Shown here: positions 1-27,387 of the stretch, piece by piece | Layout of the letters: each line of letters begins with the position of its first letter | Position numbering within the stretch: position 1 is the first letter of the stretch | IMG/VR virus record: IMGVR_UViG_3300023278_002893 | Coordinates: 62,001 to 126,000 of that record | Direction: 5' to 3' (one strand) | DNA: 64,000 nucleotides | Notes under the pieces: model-generated | The model's database searches: none | What the model was told of the DNA's origin: nothing | The model's input: the letters and a program-made list of their open reading frames with translations, nothing else | Program-made: the position numbers and the translations under genes

Positions 1-111
1 ACCCTCTCCTGCTAAAAACTGAGCCCAATTCACGGCAAAACGCACCTCCAAACCCCCATAGGCATTTATATGGTGCTGCTCAGGCCCATAACTACAAACG
101 GCTATCTTCAT
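1..111 (-). CDS. Partial CDS (N-terminus only, runs off left edge), possibly a GT-B/GT4 glycosyltransferase
   Basis: ATG at 111 overlaps the upstream stop (ATGA). Translation MKIAVCSYGPEQHHINAYGGLEVRFAVNWAQFLAGEG; MKIA...GGxE is typical of GT4 N-termini. Confidence 0.4.
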   Translation of the reverse strand, partial: MKIAVCSYGPEQHHINAYGGLEVRFAVNWAQFLAGEG

Positions 112-827
112 ACTAATAAATCCTCATCTAATCCGGTTATCAAATTTTGCGTTTTCTTCAGTACCGTCAACCCGTGCACACTTGCCTCTGGCCCAAACCC
201 TCTGGTGCCGTGATGAGTAGTAAATCCTTTACCTTGTCGGGTAGACACGATCTCATTCAGCAGATCGGCACCGATAGCGGCGGGGGCGGTATCTTCAATT
301 ATGTAAAACCCACCATCTTTCACAAACGGCCAAAAATCTTCAAAACTAAACTGGCAAGCATCCGCATCGTGGTTACCATCATCTATAACGATATCGAAAG
401 GCCCGTGCTTCTTCGCAATAGCTTTCATAGCAGGTCGATCCCTCTGATCTGCTATTTCATAGATAACTTTGGAAAGGGCTGCTGGATCAAAATCGGACTG
501 TCCTTCATATCTATTATGATCTACACCAATAATCTTGGTGTCTGAATGGGTAAAAAAGTCTTGGAAATATTCCATGGACGCACCATAATATACCCCAAGT
601 TCTAAAACTTTAATAGGTTCGTGTTTGAACGGATCAAACAGCACTTCGTATACATCTATAATAGAAGCATCCCATTTACTTGTCGAATATTTGAAGTAAG
701 GTCGCGTGACATAATGGCCCTTATCAAACCTAACCCAACGCGTACTGTAAGGCACGTCTGGATTATCTTTATGTGGATGTGGTGAGTCGGGAGGCATTCG
801 TCCCCACTCTTTAAAATCAACACTCAT
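108..827 (-). CDS. Class I SAM-dependent methyltransferase (sugar O-methyltransferase-like)
   Basis: Motif I VLELGVYYGAS, IIGVD, FDIVIDDGNH, and KDGGFYIIED. Confidence 0.75.
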   Translation of the reverse strand: MSVDFKEWGRMPPDSPHPHKDNPDVPYSTRWVRFDKGHYVTRPYFKYSTSKWDASIIDVYEVLFDPFKHEPIKVLELGVYYGASMEYFQDFFTHSDTKIIGVDHNRYEGQSDFDPAALSKVIYEIADQRDRPAMKAIAKKHGPFDIVIDDGNHDADACQFSFEDFWPFVKDGGFYIIEDTAPAAIGADLLNEIVSTRQGKGFTTHHGTRGFGPEASVHGLTVLKKTQNLITGLDEDLLV

Positions 828-846
828 GGTGTAATAACCCCCTTCA

Positions 847-1542
847 TTATGATAAAATAACCTGGCCGAGCGTACCTCTAGCTCTTAGCATTTGGGAAGC
901 ACACGCGTGAGAGTCGCACGGATAGCGCACTACCTCCACTCCAGGGCACGAGGCTATATGATTTGCATGATTCAAATCCTGCTGGCAGTCCTCCCCGATG
1001 TGAACTTTATACACTGTCTTCCCATTATAGTCCTTTATGACCTCCTTCAGATCACGAAAATCATTTTCAGGTGCTATGGTTGCGGTGTGCAGCTGTTTAC
1101 ATTTGTAAATTGTGGGATCATCGTGCTCTCTCCCCCAGTCTTCGTACAAAATAACCTGGGGACCAAAAGCATGCACGGAATCGACCTTCAACCAGTGCCC
1201 AAATAGTATTGACCCGTAGCCTCCTGCAGAAACCCCCACACAAGTTATACGCGAAGGGCGCATCGTGGTGATTAACTCTCTTAGGCACGCAAGAAGGTCG
1301 TGTGCATTAAGAATATTAGCATCTATCCCTAAATGATAATACGCCATATAGGGATCCCGTATAAAGATCTTTGAATGTGCGGACCCACTAGTAGCCTTAA
1401 CGAATTCAAAGTTTGCCAACTCATTTAACCCACGGGCATGTCCGGTAAATGCTATAACCAAAGGCGCCCCCACACTAGTCTCCCACATTATATGGGGGGT
1501 AACTAGTGCCTCTGTGTCTACCAAGGTATTACCTACCATCAT
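847..1542 (-). CDS. Alpha/beta-hydrolase-fold protein (glycan acyl-esterase/transferase-like)
   Basis: Nucleophile elbow GVSAGGYG, AFGPQ, C-terminal His (DSH); located inside a glycan cluster. Confidence 0.55.
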   Translation of the reverse strand: MMVGNTLVDTEALVTPHIMWETSVGAPLVIAFTGHARGLNELANFEFVKATSGSAHSKIFIRDPYMAYYHLGIDANILNAHDLLACLRELITTMRPSRITCVGVSAGGYGSILFGHWLKVDSVHAFGPQVILYEDWGREHDDPTIYKCKQLHTATIAPENDFRDLKEVIKDYNGKTVYKVHIGEDCQQDLNHANHIASCPGVEVVRYPCDSHACASQMLRARGTLGQVILS

Positions 1543-2114
1543 ACCAATCCTTTACCGCCTGTTTTCAAAAACACCGAGGCCGCCCACTTCATCGGGAGAG
1601 ACGGATTATTGGGATCCATCATCTCCTTACCGGTGTAGGGATTTAATCCGTAACTATAAAAGTCAAGGATATCTCCACCGGCCCAAGACCCCATGGTGTT
1701 GTAAGCGTCCATATGGCCGGGGCTGTCTGTGTTATCCATAAAGATCGCATACTTAGCTTTGGCGTAACACTCCTCCATACACTCTCTACGAAAGTGTCCG
1801 TCTACGAAAACGAGATCAAATTGACCCTCATATTCATGAATCAGTTTGGAGTAGCCTGCAATGTCAAATTTTCCACCAATGTCTGCTTTCAGCACGTACT
1901 CTACGTTTTTAATGTCGTGTTCTGCCAACTCTCTAGCACATGCTTCGTAACAATGCGGCATTCTATCGACTGCCACCACTTCTCCCGCATTCTTCCCGAA
2001 CCACAGAGTTGACTTTCCAGAGCCATACTCAAAGATTCTCATGTTTGGTTTCACAAAGCCAACGAGCCAATCATATGCGTCATAAGGAATAAAAGGTCTA
2101 ATATTATCTTCCAT
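1539..2114 (-). CDS. SAM-dependent methyltransferase
   Basis: IFEYGSGKSTLWF, VVAVD, FDLVFVDG, MDN. Confidence 0.7.
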   Translation of the reverse strand: MEDNIRPFIPYDAYDWLVGFVKPNMRIFEYGSGKSTLWFGKNAGEVVAVDRMPHCYEACARELAEHDIKNVEYVLKADIGGKFDIAGYSKLIHEYEGQFDLVFVDGHFRRECMEECYAKAKYAIFMDNTDSPGHMDAYNTMGSWAGGDILDFYSYGLNPYTGKEMMDPNNPSLPMKWAASVFLKTGGKGLV

Positions 2115-2117
2115 AAT

Positions 2118-2672
2118 TTACTCCGGGAGCCTGATCAAAGCGGTACCCTTACCGCCAATAAATAACTCACAATGAAATCCTGCTTTCGAAAGTTCTCTAA
2201 CCAGTATCTCAGGTCCTGTCCTCGGAGCCTTCACATCGTGCACCCCTACCAAACCACCGGGACGAACCATTGGGGAATAATTGTCCCAATCCGCTCTTGC
2301 AATTTCCTGAGTGTGCCCCCCATCTATCCAGAGGAAGTCATAGGGTGCATATTCTCTCACTTTTTCTATGATTTCCTGACTAGTAGAATCCCCTTGTATG
2401 AATAAAGGAACAGGTGCTTCGGGGAAATCAACCGTAAGCTGGGTATGATCTAAATCTAGGGACACCACCCTCTCAGAAGTAAGTAATTGCCAGAAACGAG
2501 TAGTCCCCCCGTACTGTACTCCTATTTCCAGGGTACGTGTAGGTCGGAGAATGTTCAACCTTTCAACTACTGGCCACAGCTCTTGGGGATCTTGAGCAAT
2601 CTTAGCACCCATTCCCCCCAATTCCTCGTTAAATATCTGATCGAAGCTACCTTTATCCATTAAACATCCCAC
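2118..2672 (-). CDS. SAM-dependent methyltransferase (Methyltransf_24-like)
   Basis: LEIGVQYGGT, IQGDS, YDFLWIDGGH, VRPGGLVGVHD. Confidence 0.75.
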   Translation of the reverse strand: MGCLMDKGSFDQIFNEELGGMGAKIAQDPQELWPVVERLNILRPTRTLEIGVQYGGTTRFWQLLTSERVVSLDLDHTQLTVDFPEAPVPLFIQGDSTSQEIIEKVREYAPYDFLWIDGGHTQEIARADWDNYSPMVRPGGLVGVHDVKAPRTGPEILVRELSKAGFHCELFIGGKGTALIRLPE

Positions 2673-3502
2673 TTTACGCGAGGATCATCACCCATCTTAG
2701 CTTTAATAGCCTCCTCGTTACCTTGGTAATGTAATATAGCAGCGTCAAATGCACTCTCTTTGTACATTGACCAGTACGCATTGTATGCGGAAGGTAGTTG
2801 TTCGTAGGTATCTGCTGTTTTTACCGCGGCGATAGTTAACGCAGTCTGTGTAAAATTGTGAGGACACTGCTCAATCCCGCTGTTGCGGATCTTCTTAGCT
2901 ATATCTAGCCAAGCTTCTGAAAACCCCCGACCATTCCTGAAAAAAACCAACGCAGAGTTGTAATAAAAGGTGCAGGACTTCCCTCTTATCTCGTTCTGAA
3001 AGGCATCTCCTTCCCCCATCCCCTCCTTAAACTTCTCCTCCGGAGGAGTAACTCCCACATGTTCGTAAAGCTGTTTCCAAATGTGGACATGTTCTGACCC
3101 GGCCCAACGTTGAAACTCACGTTCTGGGCCTACTGCTGCTATGTCCACCTGTTTGTCCAAGAGAGCTTCAAACTTCTCAGTATCCAAGACATACATATCG
3201 GTATCTATCCACAGAGCAAATTCGGTTGACACCGGGGTGCTGGCTGCTATGATTTTGTTACCGACACGCTCACACCCATTTCCTAGGGGTTCTCCCCCCA
3301 CTACCTTACACCCTGCGTTAGTTAGCCAGTCCTGGGTTATTTGTGAGGGGGAGTGATCCCTGGCATACCACATTACAATAGGAACATCTTTATACCTACC
3401 CCCGTTGGTTCTGATAGAATACACAAGCCTTTTGGCCATGGGCTCGAAGTCCGGATCAGGACGCTTCTCGCAGGCGGAAATAATAGTAACTTTGTTTGTC
3501 AT
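2660..3502 (-). CDS. GT-A fold glycosyltransferase-like protein (GT8-like)
   Basis: DxD motif WIDTDMYV, YYNSALV, YNAY, ILHY. Confidence 0.55.
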   Translation of the reverse strand: MTNKVTIISACEKRPDPDFEPMAKRLVYSIRTNGGRYKDVPIVMWYARDHSPSQITQDWLTNAGCKVVGGEPLGNGCERVGNKIIAASTPVSTEFALWIDTDMYVLDTEKFEALLDKQVDIAAVGPEREFQRWAGSEHVHIWKQLYEHVGVTPPEEKFKEGMGEGDAFQNEIRGKSCTFYYNSALVFFRNGRGFSEAWLDIAKKIRNSGIEQCPHNFTQTALTIAAVKTADTYEQLPSAYNAYWSMYKESAFDAAILHYQGNEEAIKAKMGDDPRVKWDV

Positions 3503-3532
3503 TTCTCATTCTCCTGTGAATTGCCTTTTCTA

Positions 3533-4552
3533 TTATTCAAACTCCTGATATAGTTCCGCAAAAGGCAAAGGGTGGGTACCTTGGTAGGTCAGCAGGTCGC
3601 TGTCCGTTTCCTTGGGGTTCTCTGTAAAAGCGTAACTGTCATACTCCCTAGTAGTAAAATCGTAGGGAGGTAATTCTGATTCCTTGGGTAGATTTTCTTC
3701 CGCGTGGAAAAAACTATCTACATTACGTACTCTACGGGCAATAACCTCCGGATCACCGATACGCGAGTAATGATACAGCCAAACATTGGTATTTGTAATA
3801 TCTGGCAGAGTGGGAGACTGCGCGGTGGGCGGGCGGATGAATTCAGGGAGAAGAACGTACAACTCCTCCGGTACAGGAAAATCCCCCAATTCAATTTCAC
3901 TCATCGGAACGTTTCGACAATTCTGTATCACAGATCTACAATTCTGGCCATCAAAACCATCGTAGGTATAACAATCTTTCCGAGTCAATCGGGTAATTTC
4001 AACCGTCCAATCCTTACGGATAGTGTGTATATTTCCGTAGAAATAAGGACGCCAAAAATCAAAACCCGTGATGCGGCCGAACTCTGCTAAATATTTCTCA
4101 ACTAAATGTTCCTTAATCGCGGGGGTCCTCGGTTTCAGCAGGGCGGCTCGAAGTGTATCCACCCAGGCGGCATACCTAACAGCCTCCCGAATCATTTTCG
4201 CATCATCTTCATGAAATGCCTCATCCTGCTGAACACATAGTCTCCACTCAGTATCAGGACTACATGCATCTACAGCAACTTGACTCTGGTGTCCTATCTC
4301 CAAGCCCTTCTTCATGTTATCCATGTTCCAGGGAGATTCGAATAGAACTATACCCAACTCATCGCGGAGCTGGAGAGCTAACTCGCGGGTACCATCGTCC
4401 GTCGTAGGGTCATATGACAATACCACTTCATCGCAGACAGGAAGCAACGCTTCCACACACTGGCGCAAAGGATACCCAAACTTTACAGAGTTCCTGGCAG
4501 CAACACAACCGCTTATGCTATTTTGTTCCTGTGACATGAAGCTCCCAGTCAT
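3533..4552 (-). CDS. Glycosyltransferase family 2-like protein
   Basis: ISGCVAARN..YP, CDEVV, DDGT, QQDE, LYHYS. Confidence 0.65.
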   Translation of the reverse strand: MTGSFMSQEQNSISGCVAARNSVKFGYPLRQCVEALLPVCDEVVLSYDPTTDDGTRELALQLRDELGIVLFESPWNMDNMKKGLEIGHQSQVAVDACSPDTEWRLCVQQDEAFHEDDAKMIREAVRYAAWVDTLRAALLKPRTPAIKEHLVEKYLAEFGRITGFDFWRPYFYGNIHTIRKDWTVEITRLTRKDCYTYDGFDGQNCRSVIQNCRNVPMSEIELGDFPVPEELYVLLPEFIRPPTAQSPTLPDITNTNVWLYHYSRIGDPEVIARRVRNVDSFFHAEENLPKESELPPYDFTTREYDSYAFTENPKETDSDLLTYQGTHPLPFAELYQEFE

Positions 4553-5111
4553 TCTCTACGACCCTACGCACGTTCTTGAATCCTGCTCGCTCCATGCGAG
4601 GCTTAAAAGACTCGAACGTGTACATAGCCTTGTGCGCTCCCCACTCTGTGTACTGCCCTGGGTGGGGGACTTCACCGTCTGGCATACAATCCCTCTCCCA
4701 GTCAGGGTTGCCGGAGATCTTCTCCCAACCATCGGGACCGCCAGGGTAATCGGAAAATCCTCCAAACAACGCGATCATGGTCTCTTCAGTGGAATGAGTC
4801 CCATCTACATAAGCGTGACATAAAAAGTCCAAATCAGGCATCTTGAGCCTAATGATTCCACTTGGTTTCAAAACTCTATACCACTCCCTAAGGACAGCGC
4901 CCACCTCTGTGTAGGAGAAATGTTCAACCGTATGGGCAGAGTAAAGATCATCCACCTCGTTGTCTGATATCCAATCCAGATTACGAACGTCTGACTCCCT
5001 ATCAACATTACCCACCTTTACAGCATCAACGTGGTAATATCCGGGCTCTCCGTGCGGGCCAGACCCCAACTCTATACGAACAGGACTACTTGCTGACGTC
5101 AGGAACTGCAT
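4518..5111 (-). CDS. Methyltransferase type 11-like protein
   Basis: IELGSG, YSAHTVEH, EWYRVLKPSG..PD. Confidence 0.7.
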   Translation of the reverse strand: MQFLTSASSPVRIELGSGPHGEPGYYHVDAVKVGNVDRESDVRNLDWISDNEVDDLYSAHTVEHFSYTEVGAVLREWYRVLKPSGIIRLKMPDLDFLCHAYVDGTHSTEETMIALFGGFSDYPGGPDGWEKISGNPDWERDCMPDGEVPHPGQYTEWGAHKAMYTFESFKPRMERAGFKNVRRVVENDWELHVTGTK

Positions 5112-7068
5112 CTGATACTTTCTTTTTAGTAGTCTGCCTGAATGACAAGCCTTTCTTATCTTTGGACAGACTAACTGTTACCTTCGACCCCGCACCAACG
5201 TCCTCTCCCAAGATCGCCTTGGCAAGGGGGGTGTTAAGGAACTTCTTTACTGCCCTTCGCATCGGGCGAGCGCCGAACTTCTTGTCGATGCCTCGATCTA
5301 AGAGGAAGTTTTTGGCACCCAGATTGAAAGTAAGAACCAACCCTCGGGATTTCTTGACCTGCTCGTTGATCTCGGCGAGGAGAATATCCAGAATGTGCAT
5401 GTAATCTCCACGCTCCAGCAATCGGAAATGAATCACATCATCAACCCGGTTCAAGAACTCCGGTTTGAACTTCTTCTTCAGTGCGGCCGAGCGTGCCTTG
5501 GTAGTCTTGGTCTCGTCCGCCTCGTGCTCCCCACCAAACCCCATAGTCTTGCCTACATTATCTACTTCCTTAACGCCGATGTTCGAGGTCATGATAATGA
5601 AGCACTGCTTGAAGGAAACTTTCTTACCCCCCTTACTCTCCGTAAGAACACCATCATCGAGGATCTGGAGGATGCGCTCGTGAAAATTACCATGTGCCTT
5701 CTCGATCTCGTCAAAGAGAACAACCGAGAAAGGATTCTTAGATACTTCCTTAGTCAGATGACCACCCTCATCATACCCCACATACCCAGGAGGGGAACCA
5801 GTTAGTTTGGCTACCTCATGAGACTGCTGGTATTCCTGACAATCTATCCGCACAAGATGTGCGTCCAGAACCTCAGCGAGAGCCTTCGCAGCCTCGGTCT
5901 TACCTACACCTGTATTACCGGTAAGCAGGAAGCAACCTAGGGGCTCGTGGTCACGTTTAAGTCCCACCGAAGCTCGCTGGATAGCATCTGTCACCATCTC
6001 TATAGCCTCATCCTGACCAACAATGTGCTTCTTCAACTTGTCGGAAAGATTAAGTAGGGTTTCCTTAGGAACATCCTCAAATCTCTTTCTTTTAGAAGAC
6101 GCAGACTGGCTCTCTTCATTCCCCGCCGCTGACATTCTTCTATTGTTCTTAGTCTTAGATCGCTGTCTATCCTTGAAATCTGCACGGATCTTCTTCAGAT
6201 CGACATTCTCCAACTTGAGAAACGGATTATAATCTATAGCGATTTCATACAGCTCCTGTACCAGCTTAGCGGGCTTAGTGTGCTGCGTAACGCCCATAGT
6301 ATCCAACAGATGGAAGATATCAGCAAAGTCTTCGATGCACAGATGTACTATCAGAAGATGATAGCCGCTAATGGTCTCAAATGGCGTACCTCCCAACAGC
6401 AATGATGCGGTATCTTCGTCTGCTTCATACTGACGAATGTTCAATCCCACACCTATCTTCTTCCAACGGTGTCCAATCAGCTCATAGGGCACATCGTCTT
6501 TGCCCCCACCGCCCCCGCCCGGGCTATCCCTGAAGGGGTTATCGGGAGGTGATTCGTCCTGGGGACCATCTAAAGAGCCGATCTCATCATCATCAAAGAA
6601 GGGATTCCTAGGCCCCTCTACCGCATCCGGCGCGCGGGTAATAACCGCAGGGCCGAAGTCGGAAAGCGGAGGGTCCTGATCCCATAGAGAATTACTGGTG
6701 AGGGGACGAGCATCCTCATCCTCCCGCACAGTGGCTTCGATCTTCATTACATTGTTATCATTTATCATGATATTCTCCGGCAAAAACGCCGGACAATACT
6801 TATAGACCAACGACAACGCTTCGGCCCTAATCTCTTCGACCCTCGTATAGAGTTCTTTTCTCCTGCGAAGGTGGTAGAAAAAAGGTGAGGAATTTGCCAT
6901 GCAAGTTCCTAGCACAAAATCCTCATAAAACACCCGATACATGAGTCCCTTATCGGGGGAGAGCAACGATAACTTATCATTTACATCCCCATCAGGGTAT
7001 TCGAGGATCATGACATGGAAATCCGCAGACTCCAAAAATACCTTATGTGTAACATAAGCTTTGGACAT
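5086..7068 (-). CDS. Clp/Hsp100 ATPase with a single (D2-type) AAA+ module and an unrecognised N-terminal half
   Basis: IVGQDEA, Walker A GNTGVGKT, pore loop GSPPGYVG, Walker B VVLFDEIEKA, MTSN, MGF loop, FKPEFLNRVD, sensor-2 GARPMRR; no D1 module. Confidence 0.85.
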   Translation of the reverse strand: MSKAYVTHKVFLESADFHVMILEYPDGDVNDKLSLLSPDKGLMYRVFYEDFVLGTCMANSSPFFYHLRRRKELYTRVEEIRAEALSLVYKYCPAFLPENIMINDNNVMKIEATVREDEDARPLTSNSLWDQDPPLSDFGPAVITRAPDAVEGPRNPFFDDDEIGSLDGPQDESPPDNPFRDSPGGGGGGKDDVPYELIGHRWKKIGVGLNIRQYEADEDTASLLLGGTPFETISGYHLLIVHLCIEDFADIFHLLDTMGVTQHTKPAKLVQELYEIAIDYNPFLKLENVDLKKIRADFKDRQRSKTKNNRRMSAAGNEESQSASSKRKRFEDVPKETLLNLSDKLKKHIVGQDEAIEMVTDAIQRASVGLKRDHEPLGCFLLTGNTGVGKTEAAKALAEVLDAHLVRIDCQEYQQSHEVAKLTGSPPGYVGYDEGGHLTKEVSKNPFSVVLFDEIEKAHGNFHERILQILDDGVLTESKGGKKVSFKQCFIIMTSNIGVKEVDNVGKTMGFGGEHEADETKTTKARSAALKKKFKPEFLNRVDDVIHFRLLERGDYMHILDILLAEINEQVKKSRGLVLTFNLGAKNFLLDRGIDKKFGARPMRRAVKKFLNTPLAKAILGEDVGAGSKVTVSLSKDKKGLSFRQTTKKKVSDAVPDVSK

Positions 7069-9155: not shown

Positions 9156-9398
9156 TTACTCTAGGGACAGGAGTTCATAGAAAACTTCGCCAAAAGTATA
9201 TTGGAACATAGGCCCATCAAACTTCTTATGGTTCCCACACACACATCGGATTTCGGCGGTGAGAAATATCTTCTCTCTCCTGTCATCAGGCATCTCGTCG
9301 TAACCCTGTTTCCATATGGCATAAAGTTGATCATAAGAAACCGGGGTCGCTGAATTACACGCATCGCATCTTAAGTTTATGTCCATTGTTTCCTCCAT
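9156..9398 (-). CDS. Small hypothetical Cys-containing (Zn-binding-like) protein
   Basis: CDAC...CVCG; fits the operon. Confidence 0.55.
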   Translation of the reverse strand: MEETMDINLRCDACNSATPVSYDQLYAIWKQGYDEMPDDRREKIFLTAEIRCVCGNHKKFDGPMFQYTFGEVFYELLSLE

Positions 9399-9400
9399 GT

Positions 9401-9510
9401 GCTACCCAGACCATAAAGACCTGGGCAGCGGGGCGGGCGGATGTTTCCGCCGCTCTCCACCAGTAAGTTTTAGGTTCTTACAAACCCGGGATGTTAATCC
9501 CCGACCAGCC
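9401..9510 (-). other. Structured intergenic element (three hairpins plus a predicted H-type pseudoknot)
   Basis: Minus strand: CGGGGAT/ATCCCG hairpin; GGGTT-T-GTAAG-AACCT-AAAA-CTTAC pseudoknot; GGCGGA/TCCGCC hairpin; GCTGCCCAG/CTGGGTAGC hairpin. Confidence 0.35.
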
Positions 9511-9515
9511 TGAGT

Positions 9516-10010
9516 TTATAGTCTGCTCAAGACTCCGCGGTACCAGGGTGAGTTTATAGTCATTCCAGGACTTATCTCCCCGTCACCCAAGCGTAATCGC
9601 CTGAGCGAGTTCGTGCGTTTCCGTTTAAGGAGCCATTCTTGTCTTCTCTTTTCGACACGTAATTCATTTGCGCTCAACGGTTCGATATATGAGCAGTTAC
9701 TTCCTTCCTTCTCAAAGAATAATACGTTGTCCGTCCCGTAATAGCAAGCAGGTTTCTGTAAGTCAGTGCGGGGATTAGGATTAGTCTGCTCCACGCCTAT
9801 GCCTTTACAGGAGTAGGGGAAGCAATCGCGCACCTTCCTACGAGGGCCTCGGGGATCGTGGAAAATAATCCCAGGCCCTGTATTTCCTGTGGTTATTCTA
9901 AGGGTAGGCCTGGCAGTAACTCTTCTACCAGGACCTTCCGCACTAACTGGAAGGGTTATTAAGAAGATAAGGCATGCTAGTTTCAAAAACAGTGACCATC
10001 TCATCCTCAA
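9516..10010 (-). CDS. Hypothetical protein with predicted signal peptide
   Basis: N-terminus MRMRWSLFLKLACLIFLITLPVSA; several Cys. Confidence 0.55.
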   Translation of the reverse strand: MRMRWSLFLKLACLIFLITLPVSAEGPGRRVTARPTLRITTGNTGPGIIFHDPRGPRRKVRDCFPYSCKGIGVEQTNPNPRTDLQKPACYYGTDNVLFFEKEGSNCSYIEPLSANELRVEKRRQEWLLKRKRTNSLRRLRLGDGEISPGMTINSPWYRGVLSRL

Positions 10011-12091: not shown

Positions 12092-12455
12092 GCCCAGAAT
12101 TCTGTTGCCAGGGACTGGGCGACCCCCGCATACGTTATAGTAGTATCAGTACTTTACGCTGCAAATGCAAAAGACTCTACGAGGGTCTCGGTAGAACCGA
12201 ATTCCTTCGCGGCCAAATCTCTTGCGTACTCTACTAGAGAGTTAGTTTTGCCAATTGAAACATTTAGGATTTTTAACGAGGCCATCCTAAATCCTCGGGC
12301 TGCGTTCTCTACTTATTCCGTCCAGTCGATTCCAATTCTCCCCCAGTAATACTATACACACTCTGGTGGAGGAGGGGGGTGTCGAACCCCCGTGCTGATA
12401 CCGTCGTCAGAAGAGACCGAATAACAGCCATCTTGTACCTATACTCTCTTGTACA
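12092..12455 (-). ncRNA. ssrA: Circularly permuted (two-piece) tmRNA
   Basis: Acceptor piece first: ...GGCTGT...CAC-GGGGG-TTCGACA-CCCCC-CTCCTCC-A-CCA, ending at 12364. Then a 19-nt spacer. Coding piece from 12344: GGGGGAG-AATTGGAATCGAC...GCAGCC, pk1 (CGAGG/CCTCG, TTTAGGAT/ATCCTAAA), tag ORF, terminal pseudoknot. Acceptor stem GGGGGAG/CTCCTCC has the G3:U70 alanine identity pair. Outer ends are approximate. Confidence 0.92.
12154..12252 (-). other. tmRNA tag reading frame: (A)GKTNSLVEYARDLAAKEFGSTETLVESFAFAA*
   Basis: Resume codon GGC follows pk1 and TTCAATT; 32 codons then TAA; ends in the hydrophobic-AA degron. Confidence 0.85.
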
Positions 12456-21009: not shown

Positions 21010-21612
21010 TTATCCTCTCGTACTCTTAGTCTGGATTTTATCAACAATTCCAAACTCCATTGCTTCCTCCGCAGACATCCATTTGTCTCTGTCGTAGAGG
21101 GATTTACACTCTTCCACCGTTTTACCCGTGTTCAGTGCTAAATCTTTCATCAAGATCTCATTAACGGTTTCCATCTCACGCATCGTGATCTGGACATCGG
21201 TAATATCGCCCTTCGCTCCGCCAGATACCTGATGCATCATAATACGTGCTCTCGGCATAGAATAACGCTTACCTTTTGTACCTCCCGCCAAAAGAAAACA
21301 CCCCATGCTAGCAGCAGACCCAACACATAAAGTATGAATGTCGGGCTTGATGTATTCCATCGTATCATATATCCCAAGACCTGCGGACACCGACCCACCA
21401 GGTGAGTTGATGTACATAAATATGTCCTTGTTGGGATCGTCATTCTCCAAAAAGAGGAGTTGACCTATGATAAGATTGGCCATCGCATCGCTAACTGGGG
21501 TGCCTAGGACTATAATCCTATCTCTCAATAACCTTGAGTAAATATCGTACGCTTTCTCACTATTGCCATCCTTTTCGATAACAACCGGCATTGGAATTCC
21601 TGCTTCAGACAT
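21010..21612 (-). CDS. clpP: ATP-dependent Clp protease proteolytic subunit
   Basis: YDIYSRLLRDRII, YINSPGG, catalytic AASMG, IMMHQ, DRDKWMSAEEA.EFGIVD. Confidence 0.95.
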   Translation of the reverse strand: MSEAGIPMPVVIEKDGNSEKAYDIYSRLLRDRIIVLGTPVSDAMANLIIGQLLFLENDDPNKDIFMYINSPGGSVSAGLGIYDTMEYIKPDIHTLCVGSAASMGCFLLAGGTKGKRYSMPRARIMMHQVSGGAKGDITDVQITMREMETVNEILMKDLALNTGKTVEECKSLYDRDKWMSAEEAMEFGIVDKIQTKSTRG

Positions 21613-22954: not shown

Positions 22955-23617
22955 TTATAGCATAATCCTAGCATTATCTATTTCTAAATCACGCACTTCT
23001 GAAACCAGAATAAAGCCAGGAAGTAACTCACCCGTCGTAAGATAATACAGATAGTCTAAAAAATCAAAGGCGGCTTTGGTGGCTACCAAATCATCTCTTC
23101 GAAAGAAACAAACAGCTTGCTTTGACCAACCTTTCTGCCCCGGGGCCAGAAGACAAATAATATCTATGTTAGTATTATTCTCCTTACTATTCAAACTATC
23201 AGCCACCCGTATTTGAACCTTTGCAAGATCTTGTGAAATCAGTAATATAAGAATTGCTGGTAGGTCACTAGAATCTAAGAAATCTGGTAAAGTTCTCAGA
23301 GATAGAAATTTTCCAGTAGCTTCTTCCATCACATTTTGTAACCACCACTCTGTGTAAGAGGTAGTCCGTTTTTTATGTTCTGCCAGTATCCACTGACTCT
23401 CTTTCGTCTCTATTAGAAAATCAGGCCTTTTACCAATATCTGATATATCTTTTGGATCATCTATATACAAATAAACTTTGTCTCCAAACCATTTTTCTGA
23501 CCAGGGTGGGGGGTTTTGTTGTTTCTTCAACTGCCTCTTATGGTTTTCCCTTTTTCTATAACGATCTTCTTTCGACTTTCTCGACAATTTCCGCTTCTTC
23601 TTATTTACCATCATCAC
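22955..23617 (-). CDS. Hypothetical protein (AT-rich, basic N-terminus)
   Basis: ORF track; composition differs from flanks. Confidence 0.55.
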   Translation of the reverse strand: MMMVNKKKRKLSRKSKEDRYRKRENHKRQLKKQQNPPPWSEKWFGDKVYLYIDDPKDISDIGKRPDFLIETKESQWILAEHKKRTTSYTEWWLQNVMEEATGKFLSLRTLPDFLDSSDLPAILILLISQDLAKVQIRVADSLNSKENNTNIDIICLLAPGQKGWSKQAVCFFRRDDLVATKAAFDFLDYLYYLTTGELLPGFILVSEVRDLEIDNARIML

Positions 23618-26600
23618 TCACATCCGCTATGACCGCAATCGGCGCACTTCACACAACCACTCTCCATAATCAATTTCTTAGACTGACAGGAGCGGCATCT
23701 TGAAACCTCTAAATACTCTTCGTCTGTAATATACTTCTTCAGTACCCGCAGGATCGCTTTACTGAACGCAGTTACCTCCCCATCACACTTCGTGAGCTGG
23801 GAAACCAGCGCGTTGAGTGGAGCCCCGTGTCTAAGACTGGTGGATAAGAGACGGGTGACCATTCGATGTTCATCATTCAGAAGGAGCTGAGCTACGTTTT
23901 TGATTGTCCAGGTGTCCTCACCTGTACCAATCACGAGGTTATATCTACCGTGCCCATTCCTCCTCAGCATACCACCTGTGCGGGATGAGGATATTTCGAT
24001 ATGTTCCTCCGGGAAACAGAAAACCTCATAGGGTTTCCCATGGAGAAGACCAACCAAAACCTTCCACTTCTCGCCCTTTACACTAACCGTATGAATGTCA
24101 CAATCCAGATCATCGGGCCGTACAGGGGCATTCATCGTTACCACCGTTTTTGGCCTGGAACCTGGATTCTTGGACGGATTCTTGAGGGTCTCCAAGATCT
24201 GAGTCTTGGAACCGTCCCGATATACGGCGGTGGATTTGATATTACTATCGAAAGCACCTATATAAGCACCCATGATATCGTCTACAGTCGCTTCAGGCGG
24301 GAGATTGATGGTATTATGAGATACTATACCAGATACAAGATAGTTATGTGATTCTTCAACCTCCACATCATACATTGAGATTTTGCCTGAATTCTCTATT
24401 GAAGAAATCTTCATCACCTTGCCCAAAATTTCTAATCCTAATTCTTCTGCCAATTCCCGAGTACAATGTTGGGATCTTCTTTGTCGTAAATTACGGACAG
24501 CAGAATAACGAGGATGGTCCGATTTGATAGGCAGTGTGAACACATCTTCATGCTCGAATGCAACCAGGTGTGCTCTACCGCCATTAACTTTGGGAGAACA
24601 TTTGTGTAACTCTAAAGGTGTGATGGTTTGCATTAGTTCATCAGAAACCATTACGGAATGAACGTAATAGCCGTGAGACTTAACTAGTTTCTTACCACAA
24701 TAAACACGGGGCTTTCCAAAAGAACGAAGCATTTCTGCGACTTGATACGCCAGTGCTTGGGATTTACCTTCGTACACAACCAAACCCCTTCCCGGCCGCA
24801 AATAACCATCTAAAGTAAGTCCTTCGATAAAATGTCTCTTTTCAGCAAAACTTCCTTGTAAAATCTGATCAGGAACTCTCTTATCATCACTCCTATAACC
24901 AATCAATTCTCTAAGATATCTAACTAATACACGAGAGGTAAGTCTGTGCTCAACCACACCCGTCCGCGAATCTATATGAACTTCTGGAATAACGCCAAAT
25001 ACATCTTCAGCGAGTGTGTTGTAGAAATTCCCCACATTCCCTGAATCTTTTTCGTATAAAGAAACCTTACCAGTGGATTCCTCCAAATGACCATCCGCAG
25101 CCAACATTCCTAAAAGTTTAGCTAGATAAACCGACATTTTATCCGGTAAATTTATAAAGTTCGCATTAGTTTTCCTATCAAAATCTATATTTATTGTACG
25201 AGAATTCTCAACATCAAAAACCTCAAAATCGTCGTTGATAAATATCAAATCATCGGGAACTAGATCACCCAATGTTTTCCAACCCCCGATAGTTTTTACT
25301 TTATGAGAATCAGATGCGCCAGTTATGGATGATCCGTTTTGCAGAACAAGACTGGTTGCATCTTTCTCACCGGCACTGTAATGGGAAAGTACTTTACGAT
25401 GAATACCCTTCTCATCTATAACCATCAGATCCTGAAGCGGTTCCCCAAAAACATCAACACCGCGTGCGTTACCGCACTGCTCAATAGGTAAAATTCCTCT
25501 ATTAGTATTGATCAAAGTACCCCCAGCTAAACATTTACTCACACTAGAATCAACCTGCTCAGAAAACACCGCCTGCATCGCCAAGTGGTCTTGCCAGCTG
25601 ATGTCCTGAGCCTGCTCGAAGTACTTTGGCACCCTCTTATGTCGCCTTAGTTCCCGGAAATCGTGGTTGTATTCCGCAAAGTCAATACCGCGAGTCTCCA
25701 TCCATTCTAAAAATGAAGGGCAACCATCCATAATAGTTCCGATATTGGAATTCCGCTGATACGCCATAGCAAAATAAGGCTCGCACCCAGAAGAATAACC
25801 GGTAATAGTTCCAGTTGTTCCCGTAGGAGCTTGCGTAAGGATAGTGACATTCGCAATACCATGGGTCTTTAACTCCTTCTCCAGATCAGGTCTCTCCTTG
25901 AGAAGCTGCTGGATGAACTTACTCTTCTTGAACTTCTTGAAGTCGTAAGCTGGGAATGGACCAATCTCTTTGGCCATATCAATGGACGCTTCGTACGCTG
26001 TGTGCTTGATGAACTTGAGAATCTTCTTAGCCATTCCGCGGCCAGAATCTTGACTATAAATGTAATCCTTATCGGTGCGCATGGACATGCGGATTAACGC
26101 CTCGTGCATACCAATGGTTCCCAAACCTATGCGACGCTCTTTCTGGGTGTTCTCATCAATCTTCTCAACTCCAGTCTCGTTGAGAAGGGTAATCCAGTTA
26201 AGACTACGCACCAAAACAAAGACTGCTTCCCTCAACCCATCCCAATCCACCGAACCGTCCTCATTTACAAACTCAGGAAGGACAAGACTGGACAAGCAAC
26301 ACACTGACCATGGTGGAAGAACCTGCTCTGCACAAGGATTGGTTGCGTCTAACGGATTAAAATATTCCCCATTGTGATAAGCACGTGCCCTATCTACGAA
26401 AAAGATACCAGGGCACCCATCCTCCCATGCATTGGTACAGATACGTCTAAACCACTCATATGCGGTAAGGTGATAGGAACTCTTGACAAGTTTTAGATGC
26501 TTAGTATTCCTAAAAGGAACCTCATTCGTAGCCTCATGTAGTGCTATTTCTTCATCTGGCGCGCACACTGAAATGGGAATAACAGTCTCCACGCCGGGCA

Positions 26601-27387
26601 TTGTGGGATCATACATAGTCAATTCATAATCCCAGAGCGCCCAGGTCTTTTCTTCCCAACTCAACTTCCACGGCTTCTTCGACTGACGCTTAACCTGGCG
26701 CATAAAATTATCTGAAATAGCGACAGAAACATTGAATGTCTGCCATGGATAGGGGTTAGTCCATTGCCACTGCTCGAACATACTCTCATCGGTGATCACT
26801 GCAAACTTGCGAAGATTCTCCCAATTGCCTCGGGACTTCTTCGTAATAAACTTCAGAAGACCGGGGTGGGTATCATTCAGAATACCCATATTAGCGCCGC
26901 TACGATTACCTCCCTGCTGAATATTAGAGGAAGCGTATCCCATAGAAGTAATGAAACCTTCAGGGCCACTTGCGCGCGCATTGGCACCCTTACACCAAGC
27001 GCCTGCCGGGCGCAAGCTGGAGAAGTTGATCCCCGTGCCTCCCCCATGTGCCTGGATATGGAAGTGAATCCGCTGGGCCTCAGAGATCTCCTCCCGGCTG
27101 TCCCCAATACCTAGGACAAAACAATTGAACATGTTCTTGATCCCCGTACCTGCTTGGGCAAGAGGACGTCCTGCGTACATGATCTTCTTCTCTTCGCACA
27201 GGGTCTGCGCGAGGGCTCTTCGGTGGTCCTCATCGTTCTGATAAATATAGTTATTTGTACGATTAAATGTTTCAAAAATATCCTTCTCGACCGGGAGACC
27301 GGAGTCGTCTTTGAGGTAATAACGGGAACCCGCAATAGACTCGTGAGCGGGATTAGTGAAGTAAGTTTTAGCTGTGTACTTACCCAT
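23614..27387 (-). CDS. nrdJ: Class II (B12-dependent) ribonucleotide reductase, intein-containing
   Basis: NCFV, GGGTG.NFS.LRP, TNPCAEQ..CCL, RRIGLG, APTGT, DSSVSK/TIN, C-terminal TSCPD-like domain and CxxC...ESGCVKCADCGHSGC; no beta-subunit gene nearby. Confidence 0.9.
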   Translation of the reverse strand: MGKYTAKTYFTNPAHESIAGSRYYLKDDSGLPVEKDIFETFNRTNNYIYQNDEDHRRALAQTLCEEKKIMYAGRPLAQAGTGIKNMFNCFVLGIGDSREEISEAQRIHFHIQAHGGGTGINFSSLRPAGAWCKGANARASGPEGFITSMGYASSNIQQGGNRSGANMGILNDTHPGLLKFITKKSRGNWENLRKFAVITDESMFEQWQWTNPYPWQTFNVSVAISDNFMRQVKRQSKKPWKLSWEEKTWALWDYELTMYDPTMPGVETVIPISVCAPDEEIALHEATNEVPFRNTKHLKLVKSSYHLTAYEWFRRICTNAWEDGCPGIFFVDRARAYHNGEYFNPLDATNPCAEQVLPPWSVCCLSSLVLPEFVNEDGSVDWDGLREAVFVLVRSLNWITLLNETGVEKIDENTQKERRIGLGTIGMHEALIRMSMRTDKDYIYSQDSGRGMAKKILKFIKHTAYEASIDMAKEIGPFPAYDFKKFKKSKFIQQLLKERPDLEKELKTHGIANVTILTQAPTGTTGTITGYSSGCEPYFAMAYQRNSNIGTIMDGCPSFLEWMETRGIDFAEYNHDFRELRRHKRVPKYFEQAQDISWQDHLAMQAVFSEQVDSSVSKCLAGGTLINTNRGILPIEQCGNARGVDVFGEPLQDLMVIDEKGIHRKVLSHYSAGEKDATSLVLQNGSSITGASDSHKVKTIGGWKTLGDLVPDDLIFINDDFEVFDVENSRTINIDFDRKTNANFINLPDKMSVYLAKLLGMLAADGHLEESTGKVSLYEKDSGNVGNFYNTLAEDVFGVIPEVHIDSRTGVVEHRLTSRVLVRYLRELIGYRSDDKRVPDQILQGSFAEKRHFIEGLTLDGYLRPGRGLVVYEGKSQALAYQVAEMLRSFGKPRVYCGKKLVKSHGYYVHSVMVSDELMQTITPLELHKCSPKVNGGRAHLVAFEHEDVFTLPIKSDHPRYSAVRNLRQRRSQHCTRELAEELGLEILGKVMKISSIENSGKISMYDVEVEESHNYLVSGIVSHNTINLPPEATVDDIMGAYIGAFDSNIKSTAVYRDGSKTQILETLKNPSKNPGSRPKTVVTMNAPVRPDDLDCDIHTVSVKGEKWKVLVGLLHGKPYEVFCFPEEHIEISSSRTGGMLRRNGHGRYNLVIGTGEDTWTIKNVAQLLLNDEHRMVTRLLSTSLRHGAPLNALVSQLTKCDGEVTAFSKAILRVLKKYITDEEYLEVSRCRSCQSKKLIMESGCVKCADCGHSGCE
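24313..25533 (-). mobile_element. Intein with LAGLIDADG homing endonuclease (407 aa) in nrdJ
   Basis: Starts CLAGGTLI after VSK; ends YDVEVEESHNYLVSGIVSHN before Thr+1; LAGLIDADG blocks LLGMLAADG and FIEGLTLDG; AT-richer than the exteins. Confidence 0.92.

What the first reader, a model, noticed from the sequence alone, without database searches (positions are those of the whole stretch)
12092..12455. Circularly permuted two-piece tmRNA in a phage-like genome
Seen: the tRNA-like 3' half (T arm GGGGG-TTCGACA-CCCCC, CTCCTCC-A-CCA, ending 12364) lies upstream of the 5' half (GGGGGAG-AATTGGAATCGAC, starting 12344), separated by 19 nt. The halves form a 7-bp acceptor stem with G3:U70, and helix 2 (GCAGCC/GGCTGT) pairs across the pieces. 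pk1, the tag ORF and a terminal pseudoknot (CGGGGG/TCCCTG with GCCCAG/CTGGGC around GCAACAGAA) follow, and no second 3' half appears downstream. Established: permuted ssrA occurs in Alphaproteobacteria, some Betaproteobacteria and some cyanobacteria. The phage tmRNAs I know of are one-piece, and standard annotation often misses permuted genes. This may be an independent permutation or a captured host gene.
Basis: partly seen in the sequence, partly recalled or inferred. Interest (0 to 1): 0.9.

Follow-up and report, generated by a model that had tools for sequence, protein, structure and literature searches.

The report
Two-piece tmRNA in a jumbo phage
The window carries a real, circularly permuted (two-piece) ribosome-rescue RNA gene on its minus strand; such genes are already known in phages, but this one belongs to a group of giant phages whose copies all encode an unusually long, conserved degradation tag and sit near the phages' own Clp protease genes.

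Summary
Window 12429..12092 (minus strand) matches Rfam tmRNA_permuted at 78.3 bits against a threshold of 47. It has a 7-bp acceptor stem with G3:U70, a T arm, an encoded CCA, a 19-nt intervening segment, helix 2 across the two pieces, pk1, a tag frame and a terminal pseudoknot. ARAGORN misses it.

The novelty premise is wrong. Two-piece tmRNAs in phages are published (53 forms in phage genomes, PMC9004378), and one generic junction pattern found 41 loci in IMG/VR.

The window is part of a 297,725-bp IMG/VR contig with a T4-like replication module. Eight related large contigs from independent assemblies carry the homologous permuted gene at the same syntenic place. Compensatory changes occur in every helix, and G3:U70 is invariant. 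So it is neither a misassembly nor a recent host capture.

The distinctive feature is a conserved 28-38-codon tag (32 in the window, ending AFAA) with Gly, Asp or Ala resume codons. A phage ClpP and a single-ring ClpC-like unfoldase are conserved nearby.

Lineage assignment (alpha, beta, cyano or separate) stays unresolved, and the host is unknown. Verdict: a new, divergent member of a known kind, of moderate interest.

The parts
12092..12429 (-). Whole permuted tmRNA (ssrA) gene. The 5' limit is the first base of helix 2; the true transcript ends are unknown.
   Evidence: Rfam RF04321 at 78.3 bits covers 12429..12154. The terminal pseudoknot extends the gene to 12092.
12364..12429 (-). Acceptor piece (66 nt): 3' strands of helix 2, the T arm, the acceptor 3' strand, discriminator A and encoded CCA.
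12425..12429 (-). Helix 2a strand GGCUG, pairing across the pieces with CAGCC at 12298-12302.
   Evidence: 100% paired in 9 relatives, with compensatory changes at 2 of 5 pairs.
12409..12419 (-). Helix 2b strand, pairing across the pieces with 12303-12313.
   Evidence: 93% of cells paired; 8 of 10 pairs show compensatory changes.
12375..12391 (-). T arm: GGGGG / loop UUCGACA / CCCCC.
   Evidence: Read directly from the sequence. 100% paired across the clade.
12364..12374 (-). Acceptor 3' strand CUCCUCC, discriminator A, CCA.
   Evidence: It is the only such site in the window.
12345..12363 (-). 19-nt intervening segment, expected to be removed by tRNA-type end processing (inferred).
   Evidence: It lies between the CCA and G1. 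Relatives have 13-21 nt here, and about 86 nt in L057.
12092..12344 (-). Coding piece.
12338..12344 (-). Acceptor 5' strand GGGGGAG. G3 (12342) pairs with U70 (12370).
   Evidence: A 7-bp stem forms in the cofold. G:U at this position in 9 of 9 relatives, while neighbouring pairs covary.
12325..12337 (-). D-loop analogue AAUUGGAAUCGAC.
   Evidence: Aligned to the Rfam consensus aAaUGGuUUCGAC.
12262..12297 (-). Pseudoknot 1: S1 CGAGG/CCUCG, S2 AUUUAGGAU/AUCCUAAAU.
   Evidence: Scores 34 in the pseudoknot scan. S1 is 100% paired with 4 of 5 pairs compensatory; S2 is 86% paired.
12154..12252 (-). Tag reading frame: resume codon GGC, 32 sense codons (GKTNSLVEYARDLAAKEFGSTETLVESFAFAA), stop TAA.
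   Evidence: The frame is conserved in 9 of 9 relatives. Indels are multiples of 3 and pS 0.68 exceeds pN 0.39. ARAGORN independently calls the same frame in 4 relatives.
12167..12225 (-). Helix inside the tag frame: GCAAGAG 12225-12219 with CUUUUGC 12173-12167.
   Evidence: 91% paired; 4 of 6 pairs compensatory.
12128..12162 (-). Helix 5, which closes over the stop codon: GCAGCGU 12162-12156 with ACGUAUGC 12135-12128.
   Evidence: 98% paired; 3 of 7 pairs compensatory.
12092..12128 (-). Terminal, pk2-like H-type pseudoknot: S1 CGGGGG/UCCCUG, S2 GCCCAG/CUGGGC, loop 3 GCAACAGAAUU.
   Evidence: 0 of 60 local shuffles reach its score. S2 is 96% paired with all 5 pairs compensatory. The same element is in the beta_tmRNA consensus. 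The AACAGAA loop is shared with other viral tmRNAs and with pk2 of a one-piece gammaproteobacterial tmRNA.
21010..21612 (-). Context: phage-encoded ClpP, a possible protease for the tag (inferred link).
   Evidence: PF00574 at 245.8 bits against a cut-off of 20.2. ClpP is also upstream of the tmRNA in relative L058.
5086..7068 (-). Context: single-ring Clp/Hsp100 unfoldase. It has a ClpA/B/C D2-like C-terminal half and about 330 aa at the N terminus with no family match.
   Evidence: AAA_2 and ClpB_D2-small domains. PDB matches to ClpB/ClpA/ClpC D2. MGF aligns with the IGF of a ClpC, and this G-F-G is conserved in the clade.

Best explanation
It is a functional, circularly permuted ssrA gene of an uncultivated giant phage, inherited within a clade of such phages.

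Shown here:
- The gene has the full anatomy of a two-piece tmRNA.
- It is conserved under RNA-structure selection.
- Its tag frame is conserved as a coding frame.

Inferred mechanism:
1. The gene is transcribed inside a same-strand gene array. The next gene's ribosome-binding site follows the terminal pseudoknot closely.
2. RNase P cuts 5' of G12344, and 3' trimming exposes the encoded CCA at 12364. This removes the 19-nt spacer.
3. The 66-nt acceptor piece and the roughly 250-nt coding piece stay together through the acceptor stem and helix 2.
4. Host AlaRS charges the RNA with alanine through G3:U70 and A73.
5. With SmpB (none was found in the window, so presumably the host's) and EF-Tu, it enters stalled ribosomes.
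6. Translation resumes at GGC 12252-12250 and adds Ala plus 32 residues ending AFAA.
7. The tagged product is delivered to a Clp protease. This could be the host's, or the phage's own ClpP with its ClpC-like unfoldase.
For: Family match:
- Rfam tmRNA_permuted scores 78.3 bits against a threshold of 47, with the full model covered.

Pairing of the two pieces:
- The cofold of the two pieces gives the acceptor stem, the T arm and helix 2 at -43.1 kcal/mol.

Conservation in relatives:
- Eight related contigs of up to 320 kb, from NCBI, JGI, ENA and Logan assemblies, carry the homologue at the same place upstream of PhoH-Rad52-Clp ATPase.
- RNAalifold finds 60 pairs, 36 of them with compensatory changes.
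- Per-helix counts are 86-100% paired, against about 10-70% for slid controls. G3:U70 is present in 9 of 9.

Tag frame:
- The tag frames are intact in 9 of 9, indels are in multiples of 3, the C terminus is A-[IFT]-A-[AS], and pS exceeds pN.
- ARAGORN independently reports the same long tags in 4 relatives.

Terminal pseudoknot:
- It corresponds to the one in the beta_tmRNA consensus.

Protease context:
- ClpP and an unfoldase with a ClpP-docking-type G-F loop lie in the window and in relatives.
Against: - There is no expression, processing, charging or tagging data.
- The host is unknown.
- No SmpB was found among the roughly 50 window ORFs scanned. The other 234 kb of the contig was not examined.
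- No promoter or terminator consensus flanks the gene.
- ARAGORN does not call it.
- beta_tmRNA scores 64.8 bits, below its threshold of 84.
- Some relatives deviate: CCA is not encoded in L055, L057 and L061, and the L061 T loop is GGCAGUA.
- The link between the tag and the phage Clp proteins rests only on co-occurrence.
Confidence: 0.85

Rival explanations
1. It is the product of a separate (fourth) permutation event within this phage lineage, not a descendant of the alpha, beta or cyanobacterial two-piece forms.
For: - No lineage-specific Rfam model reaches its threshold for the window: beta scores 64.8 against 84, and the others score lower.
- The same holds for L055, L056, L057 and L062.
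- One relative (L061) passes alpha (62.3 against 50) while the window leans towards beta, so the assignment is inconsistent.
- The long tag and the Gly/Asp resume codons are unlike the AND...ALAA tags of the other viral copies.
Against: - The gene order and the break point (after a single post-tag pseudoknot) are the same as in beta-scoring viral tmRNAs and in the beta_tmRNA consensus.
- The loop-3 motif AACAGAA is shared with loci scoring 87-150 bits on beta_tmRNA.
- The low beta score is at least partly an alignment effect. The 32-codon tag and a 28-nt spacer displace the terminal pseudoknot.
- Similar architecture could also arise by convergence, so this rival is not excluded.
Confidence: 0.15
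2. It is a recently captured host ssrA carried as a passenger, with no role for the phage.
For: - tmRNA genes are common integration sites, and fragments travel with phages. One example is the 30-nt Moorella phage att match.
- The T arm and acceptor 3' strand are identical to those of some bacterial one-piece tmRNAs.
Against: - The gene is conserved at a syntenic position in 9 contigs whose Clp ATPases are only 58-83% identical, with covariation throughout.
- G+C content is like the surroundings.
- No permuted bacterial gene with this T arm and acceptor was found among 185,579 species genomes.
- The identity with bacterial tmRNAs is limited to about 30 nt.
Confidence: 0.04
3. It is an assembly artefact, or an attP-type fragment of a tmRNA 3' end lying next to unrelated sequence.
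For: - The contig is a metagenome assembly.
- tmRNA 3' ends do occur as att sites in phages.
Against: - The same permuted order is found in eight independent assemblies from four sources.
- Every part of a tmRNA is present and co-linear.
- Helices that span the junction covary.
Confidence: 0.01
4. The RNA acts mainly as a decoy or regulator and not as a tagging tmRNA. It might titrate host SmpB or interfere with host trans-translation, as proposed for the TLD-only RNA of mycobacteriophage DS6A.
For: - A TLD-only phage RNA is reported to inhibit tmRNA (PMC4131195 and PMC11915505).
- No phage SmpB was seen in the window.
- TLD identity among relatives does not follow phage relatedness (rho 0.11), as might be expected if the TLD tracks host factors.
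Against: The tag frame, pk1, helix 5 and the sequence upstream of the resume codon are all conserved. The frame also evolves like a coding sequence. None of this is needed for a decoy.
Confidence: 0.07

Closest known systems
Betaproteobacterial-type two-piece tmRNA (Rfam RF01850 beta_tmRNA)
   Same: - The order is the same: acceptor piece, short spacer, coding piece.
- Helix 2 runs across the pieces.
- pk1, the stop codon in helix 5, and a single pk2-like pseudoknot at the 3' end are all present.
- It is the best-scoring clan member for the window.
   Different: - It scores 64.8 bits, below the family threshold of 84.
- The tag has 32 codons, against about 10-13.
- The resume codon is GGC, not GCN.
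- A 28-nt spacer and an extra helix lie inside the tag frame.
- CCA is encoded.
- The carrier is a giant phage of unknown host.
Phage-encoded two-piece tmRNAs of marine phages (OM43 phage Melnitz, pelagimyophages, cyanophages; PMC9004378)
   Same: A permuted ssrA carried by a lytic-type phage with a T4-like replication module, lying within a gene array and presumed to depend on host SmpB.
   Different: - Those copies group with alpha, beta/gamma or cyanobacterial host lineages and have short tags.
- Melnitz has a glutamine riboswitch in the gene; none was found here.
- This clade has 28-38-codon tags.
- No sequence relative was found among 50,697 phage records.
Bacillus megaphage G (tmRNA plus ClpP and ClpX; PMC12484599)
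   Same: A very large phage encoding both a tmRNA and its own Clp protease components.
   Different: - The paper gives no sign that phage G's tmRNA is permuted. It reports a 13-residue tag.
- Its unfoldase is ClpX. Here it is a ClpC/ClpA D2-like single ring with an unmatched N-terminal region.
One-piece tmRNAs of cluster C mycobacteriophages (Bxz1 and relatives; PMC4131195)
   Same: A phage-borne ssrA in a large myovirus genome.
   Different: Those have the standard gene order. The window has the permuted order, and there is no second 3' half.

Membership tests
Permuted (two-piece) tmRNA, Rfam RF04321 | Score at or above the curated gathering threshold, with the full model covered | tested here: met
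   78.3 bits against 47, model positions 1-213 of 213.
Permuted (two-piece) tmRNA, Rfam RF04321 | tRNA-Ala-like acceptor stem: 7 bp, G3:U70, discriminator A, CCA end | tested here: met
   GGGGGAG pairs with CUCCUCC, followed by A-CCA. G:U is present in 9 of 9 relatives.
Permuted (two-piece) tmRNA, Rfam RF04321 | T arm with a UUCGA-type loop and a D-loop analogue with GG...UCGAC; no anticodon arm | tested here: met
   GGGGG-UUCGACA-CCCCC and AAUUGGAAUCGAC.
Permuted (two-piece) tmRNA, Rfam RF04321 | The 3' acceptor half lies upstream of the 5' half in the gene, with no second 3' half downstream | tested here: met
   The CCA at 12364 precedes G1 at 12344 on the minus strand. There is a single T-arm/ACCA site in 64 kb.
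Permuted (two-piece) tmRNA, Rfam RF04321 | Helix 2 formed between the two pieces | tested here: met
   P2a, P2b and P2c are 93-100% paired, and 12 of 17 pairs have compensatory changes.
Permuted (two-piece) tmRNA, Rfam RF04321 | pk1 upstream of a tag frame that lacks a start codon or SD and ends in a hydrophobic Ala-rich C terminus | tested here: met
   pk1 is at 12297-12262. The frame at 12252-12154 ends AFAA-stop and is conserved as a coding frame.
Permuted (two-piece) tmRNA, Rfam RF04321 | Processing into two RNAs, alanylation, SmpB binding, trans-translation | not testable with these tools
   Needs RNA or biochemical work.
beta_tmRNA (RF01850) | Score at or above the gathering threshold | tested here: not met
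   64.8 bits against 84. Part of the shortfall comes from the long tag displacing the 3' pseudoknot.
beta_tmRNA (RF01850) | A single pk2-like pseudoknot after helix 5 at the 3' end of the coding piece | tested here: met
   The element at 12128-12092 corresponds to the consensus cgGGG..CCUUG uuACcaAA.
alpha_tmRNA (RF01849) and cyano_tmRNA (RF01851) | Score at or above the gathering threshold | tested here: not met
   Neither is reported for the window. Both score below beta's 64.8 and were hidden as lower clan members. One relative, L061, passes alpha at 62.3 against 50.
Standard one-piece tmRNA (RF00023) | 5' half, then the mRNA-like domain, then the 3' half, in one gene | tested here: not met
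   The order is permuted. No 3' half lies downstream of the coding piece. A protein gene starts at 12049.
ClpP serine protease (PF00574), context gene 21010-21612 | Pfam curated cut-off | tested here: met
   245.8 bits against 20.2. It is 50-58% identical to cellular-type ClpP sequences in the phage record collection.
ClpP-partner Clp/Hsp100 unfoldase, context gene 5086-7068 | An AAA+ D2-type module with a ClpP-docking (I/V/L/M)-G-(F/L) loop | tested here: inconclusive
   AAA_2 and D2-small domains are present. MGF aligns with the IGF of a ClpC, and G-F-G is conserved in the clade. ClpB aligns here without the tripeptide. Binding to ClpP was not tested. No D1 ring or known N-domain was detected.

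The most novel reading that the evidence does not exclude
A clade of 200-320-kb phages runs its own protein tagging-and-destruction module. The module would consist of a two-piece tmRNA, the phage's own ClpP, and a single-ring ClpC-like unfoldase.

The tmRNA's 28-38-residue tag has a conserved N-terminal block (N-S-h-h-E-Y-A-x-x-L-A, where h is a hydrophobic residue). That block would be a recognition element for the unfoldase, whose conserved N-terminal region of about 330 residues has no known family.

Such a module would let the phage clear stalled ribosomes, for example after host RNase-based defence, and route the products to a phage-controlled protease. The tmRNA would also represent a separate, phage-borne lineage of permuted tmRNA.
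Probability: 0.2. Interest if true: 0.65.

Novelty: new member of a known kind. Interest (0 to 1): 0.4.

Why it matters
What phage tmRNAs do is still an open question. Proposals include keeping hijacked ribosomes running, recycling host proteins, and sensing host state.

This clade gives a handle that other phage copies lack. It has a long tag whose peptide sequence is conserved, and phage-encoded ClpP and unfoldase genes are conserved a few kilobases away. The tag-protease pairing can therefore be tested in vitro without the unknown host.

There is also a practical point. ARAGORN, the tool used in large huge-phage surveys (PMC7162821), misses 5 of the 9 copies. tmRNA counts in giant phages are therefore likely underestimates. 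The newer Rfam tmRNA_permuted model recovers the six copies it was run on; L058-L060 were not scanned.

Contigs of this phage clade also get binned into MAGs; one sits in an Altiarchaeales bin. This is relevant to reports of tmRNA genes in archaeal and other unexpected genomes.

Tried and rejected
- megablast and blastn of the locus against 50,697 phage records gave nothing except a 30-nt Moorella phage att match to the T arm and acceptor.
- tblastn of PolA gave at most 31% identity, and the 1200-aa ORF gave no match. There are no cultured relatives.
- The two neighbouring ORFs have no relative in IMG/VR apart from the same contig. One of them has none among 5.8 billion proteins.
- The genome-contig scan for the exact T arm and acceptor 3' strand found 8 loci. 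All are one-piece tmRNAs, tRNAs or att copies, and none is permuted.
- The metagenome scan for the same acceptor stem in a permuted junction found 3 contigs. They are ordinary beta-type with short tags and only about 75% identical over 83 nt.
- Host clues were weak and were rejected as evidence:
  - The tag starts GKTNS, like the B. subtilis tag.
  - The top ClpP hits are Firmicutes-like.
  - About 56% of ORFs have an SD motif.
  - A recalled resemblance to cyanobacterial tags could not be checked.
- The alternative short frame GCA-AAA-CUA-ACU-CUC-UAG (AKLTL) in the window was rejected, because it is not conserved in relatives.
- A generic H-type pseudoknot scan was rejected as stand-alone evidence, because it gives dozens of equal scores per strand.
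- A MAFFT alignment of the terminal pseudoknots from diverse viral loci (A1) was not structurally consistent, so no covariance model was built from it.
- The promoter and terminator scan found nothing flanking the gene.
- No glutamine riboswitch or other Rfam family lies in or next to the gene.

Full report
**1. The observation**

The feature lies on the minus strand. Rfam 15 gives a single gathering-level hit in the 64-kb window: RF04321 tmRNA_permuted at 12429..12154 (-), 78.3 bits against a threshold of 47, covering the full model.

Direct reading, with coordinates checked by script, gives these parts:
- Helix 2 strand GGCUG, 12429-12425.
- T arm, 12391-12375, with loop UUCGACA.
- Acceptor 3' strand CUCCUCC, 12374-12368.
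- A-CCA, ending at 12364.
- A 19-nt spacer, 12363-12345.
- Acceptor 5' strand GGGGGAG, from 12344, with G3 (12342) paired to U70 (12370).
- D-loop analogue, 12337-12325.
- Helix 2 partner CAGCC, 12302-12298.
- pk1, 12297-12262.
- Tag frame, 12252-12154.
- Helix 5 over the stop codon.
- An H-type pseudoknot, 12128-12092.

A cofold of the two pieces reproduces the acceptor stem, the T arm and helix 2 at -43.1 kcal/mol. Only one T-arm/ACCA site exists in the window, even with three mismatches allowed. The next protein gene starts at 12049, so there is no second 3' half. ARAGORN finds nothing in the window.

**2. What the window is**

All genes run on the minus strand at about 95% coding density and about 45% G+C. 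The identified genes are:
- PolA, DnaB, primase, a clamp, UvsX, a PD-(D/E)XK exonuclease, RuvC, Endo VII and Rad52.
- PhoH, RNase HII, Fpg, and an RNR large subunit carrying an intein.
- Many methyl- and glycosyltransferases.
- A true ClpP and a Clp/Hsp100-type ATPase.

The window is identical to part of IMGVR_UViG_3300023278_002893, a 297,725-bp contig. No cultured phage is close: PolA reaches at most 31% identity, and there is no DNA match. No virion gene lies in the window. The call of "phage" rests on the replication module, the IMG/VR label and the relatives.

**3. Is a permuted tmRNA in a phage new?**

No. PMC9004378 surveyed 18,146 phage genomes. It found 133 unique tmRNA forms, 53 of them called two-piece, mostly in marine and aquatic phages. 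The current tmRNA database lists 79 phage sequences, and its authors built RF04321 by merging the alpha, beta and cyano models. Huge phages are reported to carry tmRNAs and SmpB (PMC7162821).

A single generic pattern for a permuted junction found 41 loci in IMG/VR. Most of these pass beta_tmRNA, and ARAGORN of 16 that I tested. All share the same plan: acceptor piece, an 11-38-nt spacer, then a coding piece with pk1, a 10-15-residue AND...ALAA-type tag, and an H-type pseudoknot right after the stop codon. That pseudoknot is part of the beta_tmRNA consensus.

**4. Relatives of this particular gene**

The flanking ORFs are orphans. The Clp ATPase, by contrast, has about 70 homologues of 53-82% identity and the same length, on contigs of up to 320 kb. 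Ten loci were fetched. The eight that extend far enough upstream (L055-L062) show the same gene order and carry a permuted tmRNA in the same interval. The shared order is RNase T-like gene, tmRNA, small ORF, PhoH, Rad52, Clp ATPase, then methyltransferases. Rfam tmRNA_permuted scores 78-106 bits for the five of these loci that were scanned (L055-L057, L061, L062); L058-L060 were not scanned.

I aligned the nine sequences as alignment A2. RNAalifold predicts 60 pairs, 36 of them with compensatory changes. My own counts are:

| Helix | Cells paired | Note |
|---|---|---|
| Helix 2a | 100% | |
| Helix 2b | 93% | |
| Helix 2c | 100% | |
| T arm | 100% | |
| Acceptor stem | 89% | The breaks are 1-nt alignment shifts in two rows |
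| pk1 S1 | 100% | |
| pk1 S2 | 86% | |
| Helix inside the tag frame | 91% | |
| Helix 5 | 98% | |
| Terminal pseudoknot S2 | 96% | All five pairs compensatory |
| Terminal pseudoknot S1 | 89% | In a +1 register |

G3:U70 is present in 9 of 9, while the neighbouring acceptor pairs change (GGGGGAG, GGGGAUG, GGGGGUG, GGGGUGG, GGGCUCG, GGGCCCG). Because the same arrangement recurs in independent assemblies from four sources, a misassembly is effectively excluded.

**5. The tag**

All nine copies keep an open frame of 28-38 codons from a GGC, GAC or GCC resume codon to a stop codon inside helix 5. The window's tag is GKTNSLVEYARDLAAKEFGSTETLVESFAFAA, that is, 32 encoded residues after the tmRNA-borne Ala.

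The features shared across the clade are:
- An N-terminal block N-S-h-h-E-Y-A-x-x-L-A, where h is a hydrophobic residue.
- An acidic middle section.
- A C terminus of A-[IFT]-A-[AS].

Length differences are multiples of three, and synonymous divergence (0.68) exceeds non-synonymous divergence (0.39). ARAGORN independently reports the same frames in four relatives. It misses the window and four others. A short alternative frame in the window is not conserved and was rejected. The tag is thus a translated, selected sequence, two to three times longer than in the other viral two-piece tmRNAs seen here.

**6. Lineage and origin**

beta_tmRNA is the best clan member for the window, at 64.8 bits against a threshold of 84. 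One relative passes alpha (62.3 against 50), and four others pass no lineage model. The long tag and a 28-nt spacer displace the terminal pseudoknot in the beta alignment, which lowers the score.

The loop-3 motif AACAGAA of the terminal pseudoknot is shared with beta-scoring viral loci. It also appears in pk2 of a one-piece gammaproteobacterial tmRNA that has the same acceptor stem. I read this as a divergent relative of the beta-like permuted forms circulating in phages. A separate permutation event is not excluded (probability about 0.15).

Recent capture from a host is unlikely, for three reasons. The gene is clade-wide and syntenic. No permuted bacterial gene with this T arm and acceptor was found in 185,579 species genomes. 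The identity with bacterial tmRNAs is limited to about 30 nt.

Within the clade, tmRNA identity does not follow ATPase identity (rho 0.11). There are two types of tRNA-like domain. The window groups loosely with L058 and L061. This could reflect exchange between phages, or adaptation to host factors.

**7. How it most likely works**

Shown here: the anatomy, structural selection, and coding selection on the tag.

Inferred:
- Transcription occurs within the gene array. No promoter or terminator consensus flanks the gene, and the next gene's ribosome-binding site follows the pseudoknot by 4-30 nt in all nine copies.
- RNase P and 3' trimming remove the spacer.
- The two pieces are held together by the acceptor stem and helix 2.
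- The RNA is alanylated through G3:U70.
- SmpB comes from the host, since none was found in the scanned ORFs.
- Translation resumes at GGC.
- The tagged protein is delivered to a Clp protease.

The phage has its own ClpP. It also has a 660-aa unfoldase whose C-terminal half matches the D2 ring of ClpA/B/C. This unfoldase carries M-G-F where a ClpC has I-G-F, and the G-F-G is conserved across the clade. Its first 330 or so residues are conserved but match no family. ClpP also lies upstream of the tmRNA in L058. A functional tie between the tag and these proteins is a hypothesis based on co-conservation only. Phage G is a precedent for a giant phage with a tmRNA plus ClpXP, and ClpP, ClpA and ClpX are known in jumbo phages.

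**8. Novelty and score**

The kind is known. This copy and its clade are new members, with a distinctive long conserved tag. In the searchable literature, no paper combines permuted or two-piece tmRNA with jumbo or huge phages. I could not query the tmRNA database itself. Interest is 0.4. A specialist would not be surprised by the permutation. The long conserved tag next to a phage Clp system is a usable lead on what phage tmRNAs are for.

Noticed in passing
window 9400-9534 (- strand); also L055 7503-7657, L056, L057, L058, L059, L060, L061, L062, L063: A second conserved non-coding element sits just upstream of the small ORF 9156-9398 that precedes PhoH. It has invariant CUGGUGGA and CCCCGCUG motifs and a hairpin abutting the ribosome-binding site. 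RNAalifold predicts 28 pairs, 16 of them with compensatory changes. No Rfam family matches (best E about 1). It is a candidate cis-regulatory leader or small RNA of this phage clade.
   Followed up: partly
window 5086-7068 (-) and 21010-21612 (-): The phage encodes a cellular-type ClpP and a single-ring ClpA/B/C-D2-like unfoldase. The unfoldase has a conserved V/M-G-F loop and a conserved N-terminal region of about 330 residues with no family match. About 70 homologues sit on contigs of up to 320 kb.
   Followed up: partly
L063 (NCBI GCA_014729705.1, contig WJJK01000092.1): A contig of this phage clade, with the PhoH-Rad52-Clp ATPase-methyltransferase synteny, is deposited inside a MAG labelled Candidatus Altiarchaeales. 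Mis-binned phage contigs of this kind could account for some tmRNA genes reported in archaeal and other unexpected MAGs (PMC11915505). The fetched part of this contig carries no tmRNA.
   Followed up: no
L055-L062 compared with window 12092-12429: Identity of the tRNA-like domain does not follow phage relatedness (rho 0.11). L055, L056 and L062 share 93-96% identical tRNA-like domains although their ATPases are about 58-80% identical. The window, L058 and L061 have divergent domains. This suggests exchange between phages, or tracking of host factors.
   Followed up: partly
L057 3230-3625; L061 3476-3808; L055 5629-5955: Some relatives deviate from the usual pattern. L057 has a spacer of about 86 nt between the pieces. 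L057 and L061 have CUA, and L055 has CAA, in place of the encoded CCA. The L061 T loop is GGCAGUA instead of UUCGA-type.
   Followed up: no
window 23614-27387 (-); P0041, P0054, P0059; L058 6923-8728 and 16995-18293; L063 14111-15205: Inteins and LAGLIDADG elements are frequent in this clade. They occur in the RNR large subunit of the window, and in relatives within PhoH, dCMP deaminase and the Clp ATPase itself.
   Followed up: no
L064 8601-9791: A RuBisCO large-subunit family gene (PF00016) lies in a related contig, downstream of the Clp ATPase and among glycosyltransferases.
   Followed up: no
window 108-5111 (-) and the matching regions of L055-L062: Downstream of the Clp ATPase is a variable block of methyltransferases, glycosyltransferases, sulfotransferases and a patatin-like gene. 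Its content differs between relatives, while the flanks stay syntenic.
   Followed up: no
L006 and L027 (IMG/VR): ARAGORN also misses two other viral permuted tmRNAs that pass beta_tmRNA (87-90 bits). One has an unusual tag end (…MTANA), and the other has a tag frame with no obvious Ala or Gly resume codon.
   Followed up: no
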